DNA of 64,000 nt, from IMG/VR virus record IMGVR_UViG_3300023202_000247, positions 124,001 through 188,000 of that record; one strand, 5' to 3'. Below, piece by piece: positions 40,715 to 46,715 of the stretch. The first letter of the stretch is position 1, and each line of letters begins with the position of its first letter. A program made the position numbers and the translations under genes. The notes under the pieces are model-generated. The model searched no databases, was not told the DNA's origin, and saw nothing but the letters and a program-made list of their open reading frames with translations.

Positions 40715-43399
40715 ATGATTAATTTACCTTATGTTAGTTTACACAATCAAACTACTTTTTCTACGATGGATGCATTGGTTAGCGTCCAAGAATTGTGTGA
40801 GCTGGCAAAGAAAATGGGACATGAGGCGGTGGCCATTACCGATCATGGAACCTTAGCATCCATGTGGGATGCCTATAAAATAGGTAAAAAGATGGGAATC
40901 AAAGTGATTCCCGGCTGTGAATTCAACTTCGTCGAGTCTGTCGACAATGATGAACCTTTACGTCACATAATTCTTTTGGCAAAAAATGCCACGGGTTATC
41001 ACAACTTACTGCTTCTCAATAAATTAGGCTTTGATAATAAAGCTATCATGTTCAAGTCTGCAATTCCGAGAATTGATTGGAAGCTTTTAGAAGATCACAG
41101 CGATGGTTTGATTTGTACCACAGCTTGTGGCAACGGAATCATCAGTCAGCTCATCATGCAAAAGAAACATGATGAAGCTAAAGAGTCTTTGAAAAGACTC
41201 AAAGATATATTTGGTGATGACCTAGCTATCGAATTGCAAGCACATGCTCTCGTACGAAAAGAGACGGCTTATTCCGGAGCTATTGATCAAAGGTTCATCA
41301 ACCTAAACCTTAAAAAGCTTTCAGAAGAACTCGGCATTAGAGCAATCGTTACGACGAATACACATTATGCTGATAAAGATGATTATCGTGCTCACGATAC
41401 ACTTCTAGCAATTAGAAGTGGTCAAACTGTATTCTCCGGAAATCGATTGAAATACAATGTCAATGATTTTTATTATAAACATCAGTTGGAGTTAGCATCA
41501 TTCTTTGTTCGTTTGCGTGGGTTGTATCCACAAAGCTTTGTTGAAAGTTTGTTTGAGAATACAGTTTACTTTGCAAACAAGTGCGAAGATCCCGAATGGA
41601 TTGATTTGAAGTATTCCAATCCGACCGGGAAGGAGTTGCCAAAATTTCCAGTCAGAGATGAGCCAAATCTAGATGCATTCGATGCTTGGGCAAAAAACAA
41701 TGCTCCCGGTCTTGATGATGACGTTGCGTACTTGAGGTATCGTTGTGACCTGGGATTGAAAAAGATGATCCCAGAATCAAAACATGATGAATACAAAGCA
41801 CGTTTGAAGGAAGAGTTCGATGTTATCGAATATCACGGCTTTAGCTCTTACATGCTCATTGTTGCCGATTTCATTAATTATGCAAGAAAAAATGGTATTC
41901 GCGTTGGACCCGGAAGGGGATCGGTAGCTGGCTCGCTGATTGCGTATCTATTGGAAATTCACGTAGCAGACCCCATCAAGTATGGTCTCATTTTCGCTCG
42001 TTTTCACAACAAAGAGAAAACATCATTTCCAGATATTGATGTTGACTTTGCTCCATCGGGACGTGACGAGGTACAAAACTATATTAGACAAAAATATGGT
42101 GAGGACTATGTTGCTCATGTTTCCAATGTTAATACTATAACGCCGAAGGTGTATGTAAAAGACATTGCCAGAGCACATGAGTTTGGTGGTGATAGAAAAG
42201 AGGCGGTAAAGATTGGAAATGAAATTGCTGACTTCATGCCTTCAGGCCCGAGCGCTCCCAAAAGCTTGGAAAAGGCCAAAGAGGAGTATGCTTTGTTTGC
42301 AGAGGCAATGGTTCAATTTCCGGAGCTTGCGGAGTTTGCCGATAAAATCGGAGGCAAGCCAAGAGCTTGGTCTACACACGCCGGTGGTTTAATCATTGGT
42401 GCCCGACCATTACCGGGTCTCGTTCCAGTACGTCGAGATGTACACGACTCCACGGCAATCGAGTATGACAAAGACAAGGCTGAAGAAATTGGCTTGGTCA
42501 AGATGGATACTCTCGGGTTGGAAACGCTCGACATCATAACCGATACCTATAAGTTGATTAAAGCAGTGGGTAAGGATGTACCACCAGACCCTCCGAGATT
42601 TGATGAATATGACAAAGAAACTTATGATTTAATATCTTCTGGTGATACCCTTTGTATTTTTCAGTTGAGCGGTATTGCGTCCACACTTTGTCAGTCAATC
42701 AAACCAAATAGCATCGAAGAGATTAGTTATATCAATGCGCTCGTACGTCCAAGTGCAAAAGCAATTGTTAAAGATTTCATTGCAACTCGTGAAGGAAAAA
42801 AGAAAGTAGAATTGCTGGATTCTTCTTTGGAACGTGCCTTTGGTGAAACATATGGGTTCGGACTATATGAAGAGTGTTTGCTTTATTTGGCTCAAGATGT
42901 TGCAGGATGGGATCTTCACTCAGCTGATAGGCTGAGAAAACTTACAAAAGAGAAAGGTAAGAATCCCAAAAAAGTTGCTGGGTGGCGTGAAGAGTTCATC
43001 AATGATGGTAAGAGCCAAGGAATTGATGAACATATTGTTACTAAGATTTGGGATGAAGTTGTAAATGGTTTCCAAGGATATGGGTTTAATAAATCATTAT
43101 ATTCTTTGCAGAAAGTTGATACATTTACTAAGGATGGTCAATTTTTAACATCCAAAGCAATTAAATATATAAGTTCAAATGAATATGTGCGTTCTCGTGA
43201 TGAAAAAACCGGTGTGGACATTTATGTTAGGGTAATTGATAATCATGACCACGGAAAGTTAGAAGTTGTTGATATTGAATTAGAAACTGGAGAAAAGGTT
43301 AGATGTACTATGAATCATAAGTTTAGAACAGTTGAAACCGGTGATATGGTACCTCTTCATCAAATTATTGAGAATGACTATTCTATAGTAGTGAAATGA
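40715..43399 (+). CDS. dnaE: DNA polymerase III alpha, N-terminal part fused to N-intein
   Basis: PHP (AITDHG, PGCE), GPGRGSVAGSL, FPDIDVDF, STHAGG, LVKMDTLGL; extein ends at GYGFNK. Confidence 0.95.
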   Translation: MINLPYVSLHNQTTFSTMDALVSVQELCELAKKMGHEAVAITDHGTLASMWDAYKIGKKMGIKVIPGCEFNFVESVDNDEPLRHIILLAKNATGYHNLLLLNKLGFDNKAIMFKSAIPRIDWKLLEDHSDGLICTTACGNGIISQLIMQKKHDEAKESLKRLKDIFGDDLAIELQAHALVRKETAYSGAIDQRFINLNLKKLSEELGIRAIVTTNTHYADKDDYRAHDTLLAIRSGQTVFSGNRLKYNVNDFYYKHQLELASFFVRLRGLYPQSFVESLFENTVYFANKCEDPEWIDLKYSNPTGKELPKFPVRDEPNLDAFDAWAKNNAPGLDDDVAYLRYRCDLGLKKMIPESKHDEYKARLKEEFDVIEYHGFSSYMLIVADFINYARKNGIRVGPGRGSVAGSLIAYLLEIHVADPIKYGLIFARFHNKEKTSFPDIDVDFAPSGRDEVQNYIRQKYGEDYVAHVSNVNTITPKVYVKDIARAHEFGGDRKEAVKIGNEIADFMPSGPSAPKSLEKAKEEYALFAEAMVQFPELAEFADKIGGKPRAWSTHAGGLIIGARPLPGLVPVRRDVHDSTAIEYDKDKAEEIGLVKMDTLGLETLDIITDTYKLIKAVGKDVPPDPPRFDEYDKETYDLISSGDTLCIFQLSGIASTLCQSIKPNSIEEISYINALVRPSAKAIVKDFIATREGKKKVELLDSSLERAFGETYGFGLYEECLLYLAQDVAGWDLHSADRLRKLTKEKGKNPKKVAGWREEFINDGKSQGIDEHIVTKIWDEVVNGFQGYGFNKSLYSLQKVDTFTKDGQFLTSKAIKYISSNEYVRSRDEKTGVDIYVRVIDNHDHGKLEVVDIELETGEKVRCTMNHKFRTVETGDMVPLHQIIENDYSIVVK
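43094..43396 (+). mobile_element. split intein N-fragment (101 aa, Ser1)
   Basis: starts SLYSLQKV right after FNK; G-x-x-E-V, IELETGEKVRCTMNHKF (block B TxxH). Confidence 0.88.
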
Positions 43400-45381
43400 C
43401 TAATGACTTAACGCAAAAATTCTTAAATAAGATCCCTAAACAATATCGTGAAAATATTGTGATCTTATCACCAGAAAAAGGTGGCAATTCAAGAGTAGAA
43501 TATCTGCATCCGATTTGTGGATGCAAAACAACCAGTACATTGAAGACTTTTGTTAAGCGAAAGTCTTTTGACAGTTGCTTAAAATGTTCCAATCAAAAAA
43601 ACTTTAACTACTATAAGAGTAAAATTGCTTTTCCGAATAATATAGATTTACTGGAGCCATTTCACGGTGGAGCAACAAAAGTTAGTTTCAAACACAATAT
43701 ATGTGAGTGTATAATAAACACAACATTGTCTAGACTGACCAACAGAGATCAGCTTGATTATTGTAAGAAATGCTATCAAGCATATTATTATGATTCAGCA
43801 TCAAATCTTGACAATGTAAAAATAATTGGTAAAAATAAAGGTTATAATTCTGACGCTGAGTATACATGCTCAAAATGTAGTAAAATATTTTATACGAAAC
43901 TTTCAAATCTTATTAACAGAAAAGATATTAGCAAGTGCCATGAATGCTCTAAACAAGAAACTTTAGATAGTTACTTGACGTTACTTTCTAAAGACATATT
44001 GAATAGAATAAAAGTTTTAAATCATAATGGCAGTTATTCTAGAATTAAATATGATAATCCATGCGGACATCAAACAGAATCAACTATATCTGATTTTGTG
44101 AAGCGCGAACAATTTGACTATTGTCAACATTGTTCTCAAAAAAAGAGTGTTACTGATTACATTGATTTGATTGATAAAAAGTATCATCAAAATATAGAAA
44201 TTGTTAAAGATTTGGGAGCAAAGTCTCCAATTATTTATACGTGCCCATCTTGTGGAAACAAAAGAAGATTAACTGTCAAATCACTACAACGTTTTGACGA
44301 TTGCTTGAATTGTAATAACAGTTGTCGTATTTCAAAGCAAGAAATGATTGATAATCTCAAGCCGTTTTTGAACAACATAAAAATCGTTGATGGTTTTCCA
44401 GGGCATAGAACCAGTGTTGTAACCGGTAACTGCGTTGCTTGTAATTCCAAGGTTGAAAACTATTACTTTAATTTTTCAAGATACTATACTTATTATAACG
44501 AACCAAGATGCAGTAGTTGCAGCCCAAAGAGCATAGAGCAAAAAATGCTGGCCAATTTTGTTGGGTCGTTAACAGATTTCATAGAAAATGATAAGTCAAT
44601 AATCAAATCATCAGAAACAGATCGTAACCTAGAAATCGATATTTATTGTCCTAAGGAAAAGTTTGCTATTGAATATAATGGTTTGCTTTGGCATTCCGAA
44701 AAATATGGAAAAGATAAGAATTATCATTTCTATAAAACAAGACAGTGTCAAGAGCATGGTATATATTTGTTACATATATGGTCAGATAAATATAAGAAAC
44801 ATCCAGAAATATATCACTCTATAATAAGATACTGTTTGGGTAAAATAAAGAATAGAATATTTGCAAGACGCTGTATTTTGAAAGAATTGGACAAGAATAT
44901 CTCAAGAGATTTTTTTACAACAAATCATCTTGATGGCAATGTCGGTTGTCTAAAAGCATGGGGTTTGTTTCATGATGAAAAGTTGATTCAAGCTATCTCG
45001 GTAAGGCGTGTGAGTAAGCAAAACAGTAAATACGCTTCTTATTTAGAAATTGCAAGAATGGCAACTCTTTTAAACCATTCAGTGGTTGGAGGCGAATCAA
45101 AACTGTTGAGCTTTGTTGAAAAGTTTGCTCGTGATAATGAATATGCTGGTATCTTGAATTATGTAAGTGCTGATTTTGGAAAGCCTCAACAAAATAAATA
45201 TCATTTTGAGTACAAAGGTATTACTGATGTTTCGTATTGTTATACGGATGGTAATAAAAGAATTTCTCGACAACGCCTTCAAAACAGACCTAAAGGTGTT
45301 AGTGAGCGCGCTCATGCCAATAGTTTGAATCTCTGGCGCGTTAATCTAACACCAAACTTCATTTATATATTGAATTTCTAA
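43396..45381 (+). mobile_element. free-standing homing-endonuclease-like gene: six zinc-ribbon repeats, Vsr/DUF559-like nuclease, C-terminal Mom/GNAT-like domain
   Basis: six Cys/His repeats; LEIDIY...AIEYNGLLWH; LEIARMA...VVGGESKLL; lies between the intein halves. Confidence 0.78.
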
Positions 45382-45491
45382 TGTCAAAAATAAAATCACT
45401 AAAACCGGTTGGTAAATTGCAAACATATGATCTGGAAGTTGACCATCCAGATCATCAGTATTATTTATCAAACGGAGTTTTAACTAGCAAC
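45381..45491 (+). mobile_element. split intein C-fragment (37 aa)
   Basis: MSKIKSLKPVGKLQTYDLEVDHPDHQYYLSNGVLTSN followed by Ser+1. Confidence 0.92.
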
Positions 45492-46715
45492 AGCCACTCT
45501 ACACTTTACTCTATGATATCATTTCATACTGCATATCTAAAAGCTCATTTTCCTTTAGAGTTTTTGGTTGCAAACTTGAAGAGTGAGACAAAAAAGACAT
45601 CAAACCCCAAGGCCAAGGACAATGTCTTAAAAATAAAGGACGAGATTCGTAGTCTTGGAATAAAGTTGATTGCTCCCAACGTAAACAACAGCTTGAGGGT
45701 TTACAAAATTATCACCGACAAAACGTTGATGACGGGACTCAACAGCATCAAGTATGTTAGCGATGATGCGATTGAAGATATTGTAGCTAAAAGACCATTT
45801 AAGAGCTATAGTGATTTTATTGCCAGAACAGATAGTCGCAAAGTAAGAGCCAACTCCATTCAAGCCCTTGCAGCATCTGGTTGTCTCGATGATTTCGGAT
45901 TACCACGTAAGTTGATGTTTCTTTACGCATCGGATTTTAGAAAGAAACAAAGCTCGGCTTTGAGAGCAGCCAAAAAGGCTGGTAATGATGAGTTGGTGAA
46001 GCAGATTACCGAAGATTTCGAATATCCATGGCCAGAGGATTCTGAATGGTCGGTGCAAGAACTTTTTGCCTTGGAAGAGTATTTCATGGGGGAGGGTTTG
46101 AGCGGCACGGTACAAGAACGCTATGTCGGTTTCTTCGATTCTAGCTCTATTGATTATAGACTTTTGCCCAAGATGTTTCCATATCGTCTTCTTGACGAAG
46201 ATGATAAAGTTAACAGAAAAAAGAATACACACCCAATACCAAATAGTAAAGTTCCATATTTGAAAGGAATTATAAAAAGACTATTTTCTTTTAAGGTTAA
46301 GAAAGATGATTCGCCAATTCGCGGTCAAGAAATGGCAATTATTACCATACAAGATCCATATGGAACGGATATGACTTGTATAGCGTTTCCTGATACATGG
46401 GTGCATATACAGAAGCGCATCTATGAGGATTTGTCTGGACGCTCTGCAAAACTAGATGTTGGTCTTGCTGTTGCCATGACCGGTTCGTTTCAGCACGAAA
46501 ATGAACATGTTCATTCATTCATCATTGATGATATATTGGATATACAGGAGTCTCCGGCTCTTCCAAAGGATAGAGATTCTAAAAGTATCAAACTGCCTCG
46601 TAAGAAAAAGGTTAAAGAGGACCCCGAGAAATTGGAAAAAGAAGAACTAGCTGAAATCATGGAAGATGATATGATTCAAGAGGGTTTTGTGTTTGATGAG
46701 CCGGAACCATTATAA
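45381..46715 (+). CDS. dnaE: DNA polymerase III alpha, C-terminal part preceded by C-intein
   Basis: SHSTLYSMISFHTAYLKAHFPLEF, GLNSIKYV (HhH), OB fold MAIITIQD. Confidence 0.93.
   Translation: MSKIKSLKPVGKLQTYDLEVDHPDHQYYLSNGVLTSNSHSTLYSMISFHTAYLKAHFPLEFLVANLKSETKKTSNPKAKDNVLKIKDEIRSLGIKLIAPNVNNSLRVYKIITDKTLMTGLNSIKYVSDDAIEDIVAKRPFKSYSDFIARTDSRKVRANSIQALAASGCLDDFGLPRKLMFLYASDFRKKQSSALRAAKKAGNDELVKQITEDFEYPWPEDSEWSVQELFALEEYFMGEGLSGTVQERYVGFFDSSSIDYRLLPKMFPYRLLDEDDKVNRKKNTHPIPNSKVPYLKGIIKRLFSFKVKKDDSPIRGQEMAIITIQDPYGTDMTCIAFPDTWVHIQKRIYEDLSGRSAKLDVGLAVAMTGSFQHENEHVHSFIIDDILDIQESPALPKDRDSKSIKLPRKKKVKEDPEKLEKEELAEIMEDDMIQEGFVFDEPEPL

What the first reader, a model, noticed from the sequence alone, without database searches (positions are those of the whole stretch)
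43094..45494. Ser1/Ser+1 split intein with one non-junction Cys: potential protein-ligation tool
Seen: both splice-junction nucleophiles are Ser (K|SLY... and ...TSN|S). The penultimate residue is Ser instead of His, block F has DH, and block B is CTMNH. The only Cys in either half precedes the block B Thr. The C-intein N-terminus is basic (KIKSLK..K). Known: most characterised split inteins use Cys1; Ser-based ones are uncommon and valued because they work without reducing agents. Inference: a single substitution could yield a Cys-free split intein, possibly orthogonal to existing ones.
Basis: partly seen in the sequence, partly recalled or inferred. Interest (0 to 1): 0.65.

Follow-up and report, generated by a model that had tools for sequence, protein, structure and literature searches.

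The report
Serine-type split intein in phage DnaE
The only DNA polymerase gene found in this uncultured giant phage is cut in two by a homing-endonuclease gene, and the two protein halves carry a serine-based split intein that should stitch them together; it is a genuine new member of a known kind and an untested candidate for cysteine-free protein ligation.

Summary
Window 43094-45494 spans the N-half (101 aa, Ser1) and the C-half (37 aa, ...TSN, then Ser+1) of a class-1 split intein. It interrupts DnaE (Pol III alpha) at GYGFNK|SH. A 661-aa Hef-like homing endonuclease gene lies between the halves, which is the "fractured gene" layout of Dassa et al. 2009.

At least 25 further family members carry the same intein at the same site, in viral contigs, protein clusters and two short MAG contigs. 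56 related phage DnaE genes lack it and read straight through the site. The closest solved relative is the Npu DnaE split intein. A complex model of the two window halves passed its controls.

- The single Cys (Cys71) is invariant in all 26 family members and touches the C-half in the model.
- The penultimate Ser is shared with Npu DnaE, so it is not unusual.
- The C-half is 16/37 identical to Npu IntC, so orthogonality is not assured.

Residue 1 varies naturally in the family (Ser 21, Cys 4, Thr 1). That variation is the most interesting lead.

Verdict: a real feature and a new member of a known kind.

The parts
40715..43093 (+). DnaE (DNA polymerase III alpha) N-extein, 793 aa: PHP, pol3_alpha and finger domains. 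It ends ...GYGFNK.
   Evidence: Pfam PF02811, PF07733 and PF17657. Intein-less relatives continue ...GYGFNxSH....
43094..43399 (+). N-intein (IntN), 101 aa plus a TGA stop. Key residues: Ser1 (43094-96), His51/His53 in NHDHG (43244-52), Cys71 (43304-06), Thr72 and His75 of block B (43307-09, 43316-18).
   Evidence: PDB sequence hits to the Npu/Ssp DnaE inteins, E 4e-7. Family alignment A4 gives 25 invariant columns.
43396..45381 (+). Free-standing Hef-like homing endonuclease gene, 661 aa. Its ATG overlaps the IntN stop (ATGA) and its stop overlaps the IntC start (TAATG). The model shows zinc-ribbon-like repeats, a small nuclease core (E413, D415, E426, H433, H444, K447 invariant) and a C-terminal GNAT fold.
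   Evidence: PHROG 559 and 3339. tblastn hits lie under genes annotated 'Hef-like homing endonuclease' in phages AR9, PBS1, NCTC12673, PTm1 and MEW1. 153 homologues. Alignment A3. AF2 model with pLDDT 89.7. Foldseek finds GNAT and phage Mu Mom folds.
45381..45491 (+). C-intein (IntC), 37 aa, MSKIKSLKPVGKLQTYDLEVDHPDHQYYLSNGVLTSN. Block F Asp17 and His25, terminal Asn37 (45489-91), penultimate Ser36.
   Evidence: End-to-end alignment with Npu DnaE IntC 4lx3_B. Nine viral-contig homologues all end TSN|SH.
45492..46715 (+). DnaE C-extein, 407 aa, starting with Ser+1 (45492-94) in SHSTLYSM... It contains the HHH_6 domain.
   Evidence: Pfam PF14579. Ser at this position is the native residue in 55 of the 56 intein-less relatives.

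Best explanation
This is a fractured replicative-polymerase gene of an uncultured jumbo phage. DnaE is encoded as two adjacent ORFs separated by a Hef-like homing endonuclease gene, and each DnaE piece ends or begins with one half of a class-1 split intein.

Proposed mechanism (inferred, not shown):
1. The three ORFs are co-transcribed and translationally coupled through the ATGA and TAATG overlaps.
2. The basic N-terminus of IntC and the acidic central strand of IntN capture each other and fold into one HINT domain.
3. Ser1 undergoes an N-O acyl shift, helped by block-B Thr72/His75 and block-F Asp17.
4. Ser+1 attacks the resulting ester.
5. Asn37 cyclises and releases the intein. No penultimate His is involved, as in Npu DnaE.
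6. An O-N shift leaves an intact 1200-aa DnaE reading ...GYGFNK-SHSTLY...

The endonuclease is the mobility module. It presumably cuts intein-less DnaE alleles of co-infecting relatives, so that the whole cassette is copied in.
For: Shown here:
- The layout and junction residues are exact.
- The HINT fold and the closest relatives are established. PDB sequence hits to the Npu/Ssp DnaE inteins reach E 4e-7 for IntN and 0.007 for IntC, the latter aligned end to end. An AF2 model of the contiguous family member (L067) has pLDDT 76.4. Its best Foldseek hit is Npu DnaE 4kl5, E 1e-9, TM 0.66-0.72.
- The complex model of the window's own halves scored 0.88, against 0.35 for the best of 3 controls. 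That mark was reached by 51 of 78 solved complexes and by 2 of 108 mismatched pairs. The runs agree in at least 89% of contacts and the partner's pLDDT is at least 79. Like complexes are solved, so this shows likeness rather than binding.
- 9 viral contigs, about 14 further protein clusters and 2 MAG contigs carry the same intein at the same site. Ser/Thr/Cys at residue 1, CTxxH, the Asp of (Y/C/H)DLEV, TSN and Ser+1 are all kept.
- 56 relatives have no intein and a continuous gene.
- This DnaE is the only Pol III alpha, PolA or PolB match in the 321-kb record. Loss of splicing should therefore be lethal.
- There is no + strand terminator-like site between the ORFs.
- A diverged relative with an intein-less allele of exactly the expected length (82 nt across the site) occurs in the same metagenome run.
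- P0006 and P0007 share an identical intein and about 70 aa of adjacent extein, in otherwise divergent DnaE proteins. This is a co-conversion signature of homing.
Against: - No splicing, expression or endonuclease activity was measured. Only DNA metagenome runs hold the sequence, and the three full holders may be its own source.
- The record is about 75% complete, so a second polymerase could lie in the missing part.
- The window's IntC start has no Shine-Dalgarno-like motif, so the supply of IntC rests on inferred coupling.
- Pfam's intein model scores below its cut-off (20 bits against 35.8).
- The AF2 model is of a 57%-identical relative, not of the window's own intein, and the complex pass may reflect memory of Npu DnaE structures.
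Confidence: 0.85

Rival explanations
1. The halves associate but do not splice. The intein has decayed into a non-covalent dimerisation module that holds the two DnaE pieces together, perhaps with occasional cleavage.
For: There is no penultimate His. Ser1 is a poorer nucleophile than Cys. The complex model supports association only.
Against: Every catalytic position is kept in all family members over 40-73% identity: residue 1 is Ser, Thr or Cys, and TxxH, the block-F Asp, the terminal Asn and Ser+1 are conserved. A pure docking module would not need Asn37 or a residue-1 nucleophile. Npu DnaE, which also has a penultimate Ser, is described as having generally high splicing efficiency (PMC12707363).
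Confidence: 0.07
2. The internal Cys71 has a catalytic or essential structural role, so the intein is not functionally cysteine-independent.
For: Cys71 is invariant in 26/26 members, including the 40%-identical P0019. Residue 864 (= Cys71) is in the modelled interface with IntC.
Against: Cys71 sits directly before block-B Thr72, so on a beta strand its side chain should point away from the active site (inference). The aligned residue in Npu DnaE is Ala. A canonical Ser1 is present and block F position 4 is Asp, not Cys, so this is not a class-3 arrangement. From memory, and not checked here, gp41-1, NrdJ-1 and IMPDH-1 also have Cys at this position.
Confidence: 0.2
3. The locus is a dead, disrupted DnaE pseudogene, or an assembly artefact.
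For: It comes from a single metagenomic virus record. The three runs that hold it in full may be its own source.
Against: All three ORFs are intact and tightly overlapping. The same architecture occurs in a 70-75%-identical relative (L068) and in 9 other viral contigs from different samples. Three separate runs assemble it identically. It is the only polymerase found in the record.
Confidence: 0.02

Closest known systems
Fractured genes: split inteins with a free-standing homing endonuclease gene between the halves (Dassa et al. 2009, PMC2677866), including three fractured DnaE loci from GOS metagenomes
   Same: Same architecture: N-part, endonuclease ORF and C-part adjacent on one strand. Same phage or metagenome origin and the same host protein (DnaE). 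IntN of 88-105 aa and IntC of 33-54 aa. [quoted passage not shown] Relatives that have lost the endonuclease match the paper's model.
   Different: That paper's characterised inteins are described with Cys1. Its endonucleases are the small Vsr-like type, whereas the window carries a 661-aa Hef-like enzyme. The small 199-404-aa ORFs in relatives L003-L005, L008 and L009, with an IEFDGxxHF motif, look more like the Vsr-like type. Whether one of the paper's three DnaE insertion points is this one could not be checked, because its supplement is not held.
Cyanobacterial DnaE split inteins (Npu DnaE, Ssp DnaE; PDB 4kl5, 4lx3, 1zde)
   Same: Same host protein and the same canonical split point. IntC is 36 versus 37 aa and aligns end to end with 16/37 identical residues. 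Both have a penultimate Ser. It is the best sequence and fold match among solved structures.
   Different: Npu and Ssp use Cys1 and Cys+1. From established knowledge, not tested here, their insertion point is ...Y|CFNKSH, four residues upstream of this GFNK|SH site. Their two genes lie far apart with no endonuclease. They are cellular, not phage-borne.
Cysteine-less split inteins used as tools: Aes123 PolB1 (CL/CLm), PolB16 OarG, LCGC14 PolB2, Neq Pol (PMC10189870, PMC11923092, PMC12707363)
   Same: Ser1 with Ser/Thr+1 oxyester chemistry. Naturally split. Mostly from phages or metagenomes. PolB16 also needed its non-catalytic Cys residues replaced.
   Different: Those sit in B-family polymerases and showed no detectable sequence similarity in the searches run here. 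PolB16 has a functional penultimate His (H182). The NX-motif His preceded by Lys/Arg is only partly recognisable here. All of those have measured activity and this one has none.
Pseudomonas jumbo phage MIJ3 split PolB intein with an HNH endonuclease between the halves (PMC6892783)
   Same: A jumbo phage with its replicative polymerase fractured by a homing endonuclease, and a Ser1 (SVDG...) / Ser+1 (...VHN|S) split intein.
   Different: Different polymerase family, a different endonuclease family, and a penultimate His is present.

Membership tests
Class 1 intein (HINT domain) | Nucleophile (Cys/Ser/Thr) at residue 1 and at +1, and a C-terminal Asn | tested here: met
   Ser1, Asn37 of IntC and Ser+1. 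These are conserved in all relatives.
Class 1 intein (HINT domain) | Block B TxxH and block F Asp/His motifs | tested here: met
   T72-M-N-H75. IntC Y16-D17 and D24-H25 align to Npu D118 and H125.
Class 1 intein (HINT domain) | HINT horseshoe fold | tested here: met
   The AF2 model of the contiguous family member has Npu DnaE 4kl5 as its top Foldseek hit, E 1e-9. The window halves co-fold in the complex model. The window's own sequence was not modelled as a single chain.
Class 1 intein (HINT domain) | Protein splicing activity | not testable with these tools
   This needs expression and a gel or mass-spectrometry assay.
Naturally split intein / fractured gene (Dassa 2009) | Host gene in two ORFs, each carrying one intein half, with a free-standing endonuclease ORF between them on the same strand | tested here: met
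   ORFs 40715-43399, 43396-45381 and 45381-46715. The endonuclease family comes from PHROG and annotated phage homologues.
Naturally split intein / fractured gene (Dassa 2009) | Endonuclease of the Vsr-like family | tested here: inconclusive
   No Pfam family passes its cut-off. There is a weak MTES_1575 REase match, E 0.11. The conserved E..D...E.NG..WH core resembles Vsr/DUF559-type motifs, but Foldseek was dominated by the GNAT domain. The gene is annotated Hef-like in phages.
Cysteine-less intein (sense of PMC10189870) | No Cys at positions 1 and +1 | tested here: met
   Ser1 and Ser+1.
Cysteine-less intein (sense of PMC10189870) | No Cys anywhere in the intein | tested here: not met
   Cys71 is present and invariant in the family.
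Cysteine-less intein (sense of PMC10189870) | Motif NX: a His preceded by Lys/Arg upstream of block B, near the block-F Asp | tested here: inconclusive
   His51 in D-N-H-D-H-G lies 21 residues before Thr72 and next to IntC Tyr16/Asp17 in the complex model. In the window it is preceded by Asn. It is preceded by Lys/Arg in four relatives only, and it is Tyr in four members, two of them Ser1 (L008, L075). Npu, a Cys1 intein, also has His at the aligned position. No residue-level alignment to PolB16 could be made.
Cyanobacterial DnaE intein allele | Same insertion point in DnaE | not tested
   From established knowledge, the Npu/Ssp junction is ...AEY|CFNKSH, four residues upstream of GFNK|SH. No tool result here confirms it; two papers searched did not contain it.

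The most novel reading that the evidence does not exclude
This intein scaffold may be indifferent to its first nucleophile. Within one allelic family, intact DnaE loci carry Ser (21), Cys (4) or Thr (1) at residue 1, with at least 3 changes on the tree. One well-supported clade holds all three. One Ser1/Cys1 pair is 91% identical over residues 21-100. If all these natural variants splice, the family is a ready-made panel for finding what lets an active site activate O and S nucleophiles alike. That would address the reported failure of every preparatively useful attempt to convert Cys1 inteins into cysteine-less ones (PMC10189870). The window member, or a Cys71 variant of it, would add a cysteine-free ligation tool from a new host protein.
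Probability: 0.3. Interest if true: 0.7.

Novelty: new member of a known kind. Interest (0 to 1): 0.45.

Why it matters
Cysteine-less split inteins allow protein ligation without reductant, alongside disulfides and thiol labelling. The literature read here calls them very rare and urgently sought, and every characterised example named in it sits in a B-family DNA polymerase. A naturally split Ser1/Ser+1 intein from DnaE would therefore widen the candidate pool:
- It has the short 37-aa C-half.
- It is related to the well-behaved Npu DnaE intein.
- About two dozen natural variants exist with different -1 residues (K, R, Q, A, L, H).

For biology, the locus and its relatives illustrate successive stages of the fractured-gene life cycle in giant phages: endonuclease present, endonuclease decayed, endonuclease deleted, and possibly a re-fused intein.

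Tried and rejected
- A near-identity DNA search of the phage collection found nothing. The phage has no close cultured relative, and the best phage DnaE match is about 35% identical.
- The split DnaE of Rossellomorea phage phiT1 is cut at a different place and has no visible intein relation, so it was dropped.
- A viral-contig scan for the endonuclease's C-terminal part found no relative. The word search found 153.
- Alignment A2, with trimmed halves, misaligned and was discarded in favour of A1.
- I tried to find a citable statement of the cyanobacterial CFN/AEY junction in two papers and found none.
- I could not align the family to PolB16 or Aes123 to place motif NX residue by residue.
- The supplement of Dassa 2009, which holds the DnaE-1/2/3 sequences, is not held.
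- No RNA run holds the locus, so expression is unknown.
- The promoter and terminator scan was uninformative, apart from showing no + strand terminator inside the cassette.
- A class-3 intein reading, with an internal Cys nucleophile, was considered and rejected. Ser1 is present, block F position 4 is Asp, and the Cys is in block B, not block F.
Full report
OBSERVATION

The finding's coordinates and residues are exact. ORF 40715-43399 (894 aa) is the N-terminal part of a DNA polymerase III alpha subunit, with PHP, pol3_alpha and finger domains. It runs ...GYGFNK and then SLYSLQKVDTF... from the TCA codon at 43094. ORF 45381-46715 (444 aa) begins MSKIKSLKPVGKLQTYDLEVDHPDHQYYLSNGVLTSN. It continues SHSTLYSM... 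from the AGC codon at 45492, and carries the HHH_6 domain of DnaE.

The N-half of the intein is 101 aa and has one Cys, in R-C71-T72-M-N-H75. The C-half is 37 aa and has no Cys. IntC residues 1-14 have net charge +4. The IntN strand that faces them (residues 46-66) has net charge -4.

WHAT IS THERE

The window is part of a 321-kb IMG/VR virus record that is about 75% complete. All long ORFs lie on one strand and GC is about 38%. It has no close cultured relative.

A 661-aa ORF (43396-45381) lies between the two DnaE pieces. Its ATG overlaps the N-piece stop (ATGA) and its stop overlaps the C-piece start (TAATG). It matches PHROG families 559 and 3339, both homing endonuclease families. Its phage homologues are annotated 'Hef-like homing endonuclease' in AR9, PBS1, the Campylobacter phages NCTC12673 and CP81, Tenacibaculum PTm1 and Klebsiella MEW1.

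The locus is therefore a 'fractured gene' in the sense of Dassa et al. 2009 (PMC2677866): N-part with IntN, a free-standing homing endonuclease, and C-part with IntC. No + strand terminator-like site lies inside the cassette. This DnaE is the only Pol III alpha, PolA or PolB match in the record.

RELATIVES

A scan of viral contigs with the last 98 extein residues plus IntN returned 65 loci. In 56 of them the gene is continuous and reads GYGFNxSH(S/A)... across the site. That fixes the insertion point. It also shows that Ser+1 is the native DnaE residue, present in 55 of the 56.

Nine loci (L002-L010) carry the same split intein at the same place. Each has a stop after IntN, a new ATG, and a 37-aa IntC ending TSN|SH. 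The word search on the intein region added about 14 more protein clusters. A scan of 185,579 species genomes found only two short MAG contigs, both Ser1. The family therefore looks phage-borne.

Across 26 distinct members:
- Cys71-Thr72-x-x-His75 is invariant.
- The second His of N-H-D-H-G is present in 25 of 26.

In the ten loci where both halves were read, S-R-D-E, the Asp of (Y/C)DLEV, TSN and Ser+1 are invariant. The nearest relative (L068; IntN 73% identical, endonuclease 70-75%) has the same three-gene layout.

The spacer between the halves varies across the family:
- 1981 nt in the window, encoding the 661-aa endonuclease.
- 918-1212 nt in five loci, encoding 199-404-aa ORFs with an IEFDGxxHF motif.
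- 257 nt in L002, holding a recognisable remnant of such an ORF.
- 35-117 nt in three loci. In L006 and L007 this short spacer still keeps the last codons of the endonuclease (...GIYKIGE) just upstream of the IntC ATG.

This is the decay series predicted by the fractured-gene model.

STRUCTURE

By sequence, the closest solved proteins are the Npu and Ssp DnaE split inteins:
- For IntN residues 42-97 the E-value is 4e-7, and Cys71 aligns to Ala in IRATKDH.
- IntC aligns end to end with Npu IntC (MIKIATRKYLGKQNVYDIGVERDHNFALKNGFIASN). 16 of 37 residues are identical, the split point is the same, and both have a penultimate Ser.

One family member (P0017, in L067) is a contiguous 147-aa mini-intein. 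Its AF2 model, built with the split halves as alignment rows, has pLDDT 76.4. Its best Foldseek match is Npu DnaE 4kl5 (E 1e-9, TM 0.66-0.72), followed by Ssp DnaE, the DnaB inteins, gp41-1 and NrdJ-1.

The window's own halves, each with 10 extein residues, were submitted to the complex test. The score was 0.88, against 0.35 for the best of 3 controls. That mark was reached by 51 of 78 solved complexes and by 2 of 108 mismatched pairs. The runs agree in at least 89% of contacts and the partner's pLDDT is at least 79. Like complexes are solved, so this shows likeness rather than proof of binding. The modelled interface includes residues 793-797 (Lys-1 to Ser4) and 838-865, a stretch that contains His51, His53, Cys71 and Thr72.

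MECHANISM

The steps below are inferred from the conserved residues and from established class-1 intein chemistry:
1. Charge-driven capture of IntC by IntN.
2. Folding into one HINT domain.
3. An N-O acyl shift at Ser1, aided by Thr72/His75 and IntC Asp17.
4. Trans-esterification to Ser+1.
5. Cyclisation of Asn37 without a penultimate His.
6. An O-N shift that gives a 1200-aa DnaE.

None of these steps was observed. The case for activity is evolutionary. The catalytic set is kept over 40-73% identity, in an apparently sole replicative polymerase.

It is correct that Ser1/Ser+1 split inteins are uncommon and wanted (PMC10189870; PMC12707363). It is also correct that non-catalytic Cys residues have been engineered out before, in PolB16. 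Three points need correction:
1. Cys71 is invariant and lies in the modelled interface. Npu has Ala there, which makes C71A the natural first try, but its removal is a real experiment and not a formality.
2. The penultimate Ser is shared with Npu DnaE.
3. Npu DnaE is the closest known relative, so cross-reaction with it must be tested and cannot be assumed absent.

The NX-motif His that PMC10189870 reports as a signature of Ser1 inteins could not be assigned with confidence. His51 is the best candidate by spacing and by its modelled neighbours. However, it is preceded by Asn in the window, it is replaced by Tyr in four members including two Ser1 ones, and a His also stands at the aligned position in Cys1 Npu.

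EXTRA OBSERVATIONS

Nucleophile at residue 1. It varies across the family: Ser 21, Cys 4, Thr 1. A tree built without that residue needs 4 changes, and its well-supported branches alone force at least 3. One well-supported clade holds Ser (L003, L008), Cys (L007) and Thr (L006). The codons differ by single bases. P0005 (Ser1) and P0006 (Cys1) are identical at 73 of 80 positions over residues 21-100 but at only 7 of 20 over residues 1-20. PMC10189870 states that C1S mutants are generally inactive, so this natural variation is the most interesting lead.

Signs of homing. P0006 and P0007 share an identical intein and about 70 adjacent extein residues inside otherwise divergent DnaE proteins. This looks like co-conversion during homing.

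Possible re-fusion. The contiguous L067 intein keeps the IntC initiator Met in frame (...KKCIT-M-TNIKS) and nests among split members in the tree. This suggests re-fusion of a once-split intein. It rests on a single 9-kb contig.

Intein-less allele in the same sample. Run X1 holds a low-depth, diverged contig that jumps from 43062 to 45543 with exactly 82 letters between. That is the length of an intein-less allele.

Other inteins in the genome. The same phage genome has two further inteins, both contiguous and both Cys1. One is in an ATPase P-loop and one is in a class II RNR-like protein.

The endonuclease. Its AF2 model has pLDDT 89.7. It shows zinc-ribbon-like repeats, a small nuclease core and a C-terminal GNAT fold. 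Its PDB neighbours include phage Mu Mom.

NOVELTY

The architecture is known, and so is the existence of fractured DnaE genes with split inteins (PMC2677866). Ser1 split inteins are known in phage PolB genes (PMC6892783, PMC10189870, PMC12707363). In the papers I could search, no Ser1/Ser+1 split intein in DnaE is characterised. I could not exclude that one of the three GOS DnaE loci is this allele. I therefore rate it a new member of a known kind, with practical rather than conceptual interest.

LIMITS

There are no activity data, no RNA evidence and no known host. The three runs that hold the locus in full may be its own source. Statements marked as recalled are not tool results; these are the cyanobacterial CFN junction and the Cys before block-B Thr in gp41-1, NrdJ-1 and IMPDH-1.

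Noticed in passing
Family loci L003, L006, L007, L008; proteins P0005, P0006, P0009, P0019: Residue 1 of this intein family varies naturally: Ser 21, Cys 4, Thr 1. The tree needs 4 changes (well-supported branches alone force at least 3), and one well-supported clade holds all three residues. P0005 (Ser1) and P0006 (Cys1) are 91% identical over residues 21-100 but only 35% over residues 1-20.
   Followed up: partly
L067:5380-5820 (protein P0017): This family member is a contiguous 147-aa mini-intein. It keeps the IntC initiator Met in frame (...KKCIT-M-TNIKS) and nests among split members in the tree. It may be a re-fusion of a once-split intein. The evidence is a single 9.3-kb Logan contig.
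   Followed up: partly
Window 43396-45381: The Hef-like homing endonuclease model (pLDDT 89.7) ends in a GNAT fold at about residues 485-661. Its PDB neighbours include phage Mu Mom (8bv8, E 2.7e-5) and streptothricin acetyltransferase. Several homologues carry weak GNAT Pfam hits. I do not know of any description of a GNAT/Mom-like domain in a homing endonuclease.
   Followed up: partly
Own genome outside the window: G000:C1:102628-103299 (L069) and G000:C1:310694-311851 (L070, L072): There are two more inteins in the same phage, both contiguous and both Cys1. One is in the P-loop of an ATPase (VGPMG|CLAGE...VVHN|CGKSE) with an HNH-like insert. The other is in a class II RNR-like protein (MIGQ|CIAKGE...YVHN|SGRRG) with a LAGLIDADG insert.
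   Followed up: partly
Window 43062-45543, run X1 record 2: A second, diverged contig of 6.3 kb (depth 7.9, against 215 for the main contig) in the same metagenome run skips the whole cassette with exactly 82 letters between. That is the length expected of an intein-less, unfractured DnaE allele in a related phage.
   Followed up: no
Proteins P0006 and P0007: These two carry an identical intein and about 70 identical upstream extein residues, inside DnaE proteins whose remaining sequence is strongly divergent. This is a co-conversion tract, as expected from recent homing.
   Followed up: no
L068:2460-6569 (protein P0004): The closest relative of the window phage has a second intein in the same DnaE, which the window lacks. 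It is Cys1 with a LAGLIDADG domain, inserted at GPGRG|CLTGD...VHN|SVGG. The window reads GPGRGSVAGS at that site. P0018 has yet another intein, in the PHP domain.
   Followed up: no
L002:6619-6875; L006:6610-6644; L007:6622-6732: In relatives without an endonuclease ORF, the short spacer still holds remnants of the small endonuclease gene. L002 keeps a C-terminal fragment. L006 and L007 keep the last codons (...GIYKIGE), which also supply a GGAG/GGTG-like ribosome-binding site for IntC.
   Followed up: partly
L005:6602-7813 compared with window 43396-43600: The 404-aa endonuclease of L005 shares the window endonuclease's N-terminal zinc-ribbon module (IPxxxRxN...CGC...FVKRxxFDxC..C) but has the small IEFDGxxHF-type nuclease at its C-terminus. 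This looks like modular shuffling of DNA-binding and nuclease parts. A Pfam ROS_MUCR zinc-finger hit also falls in L005.
   Followed up: no
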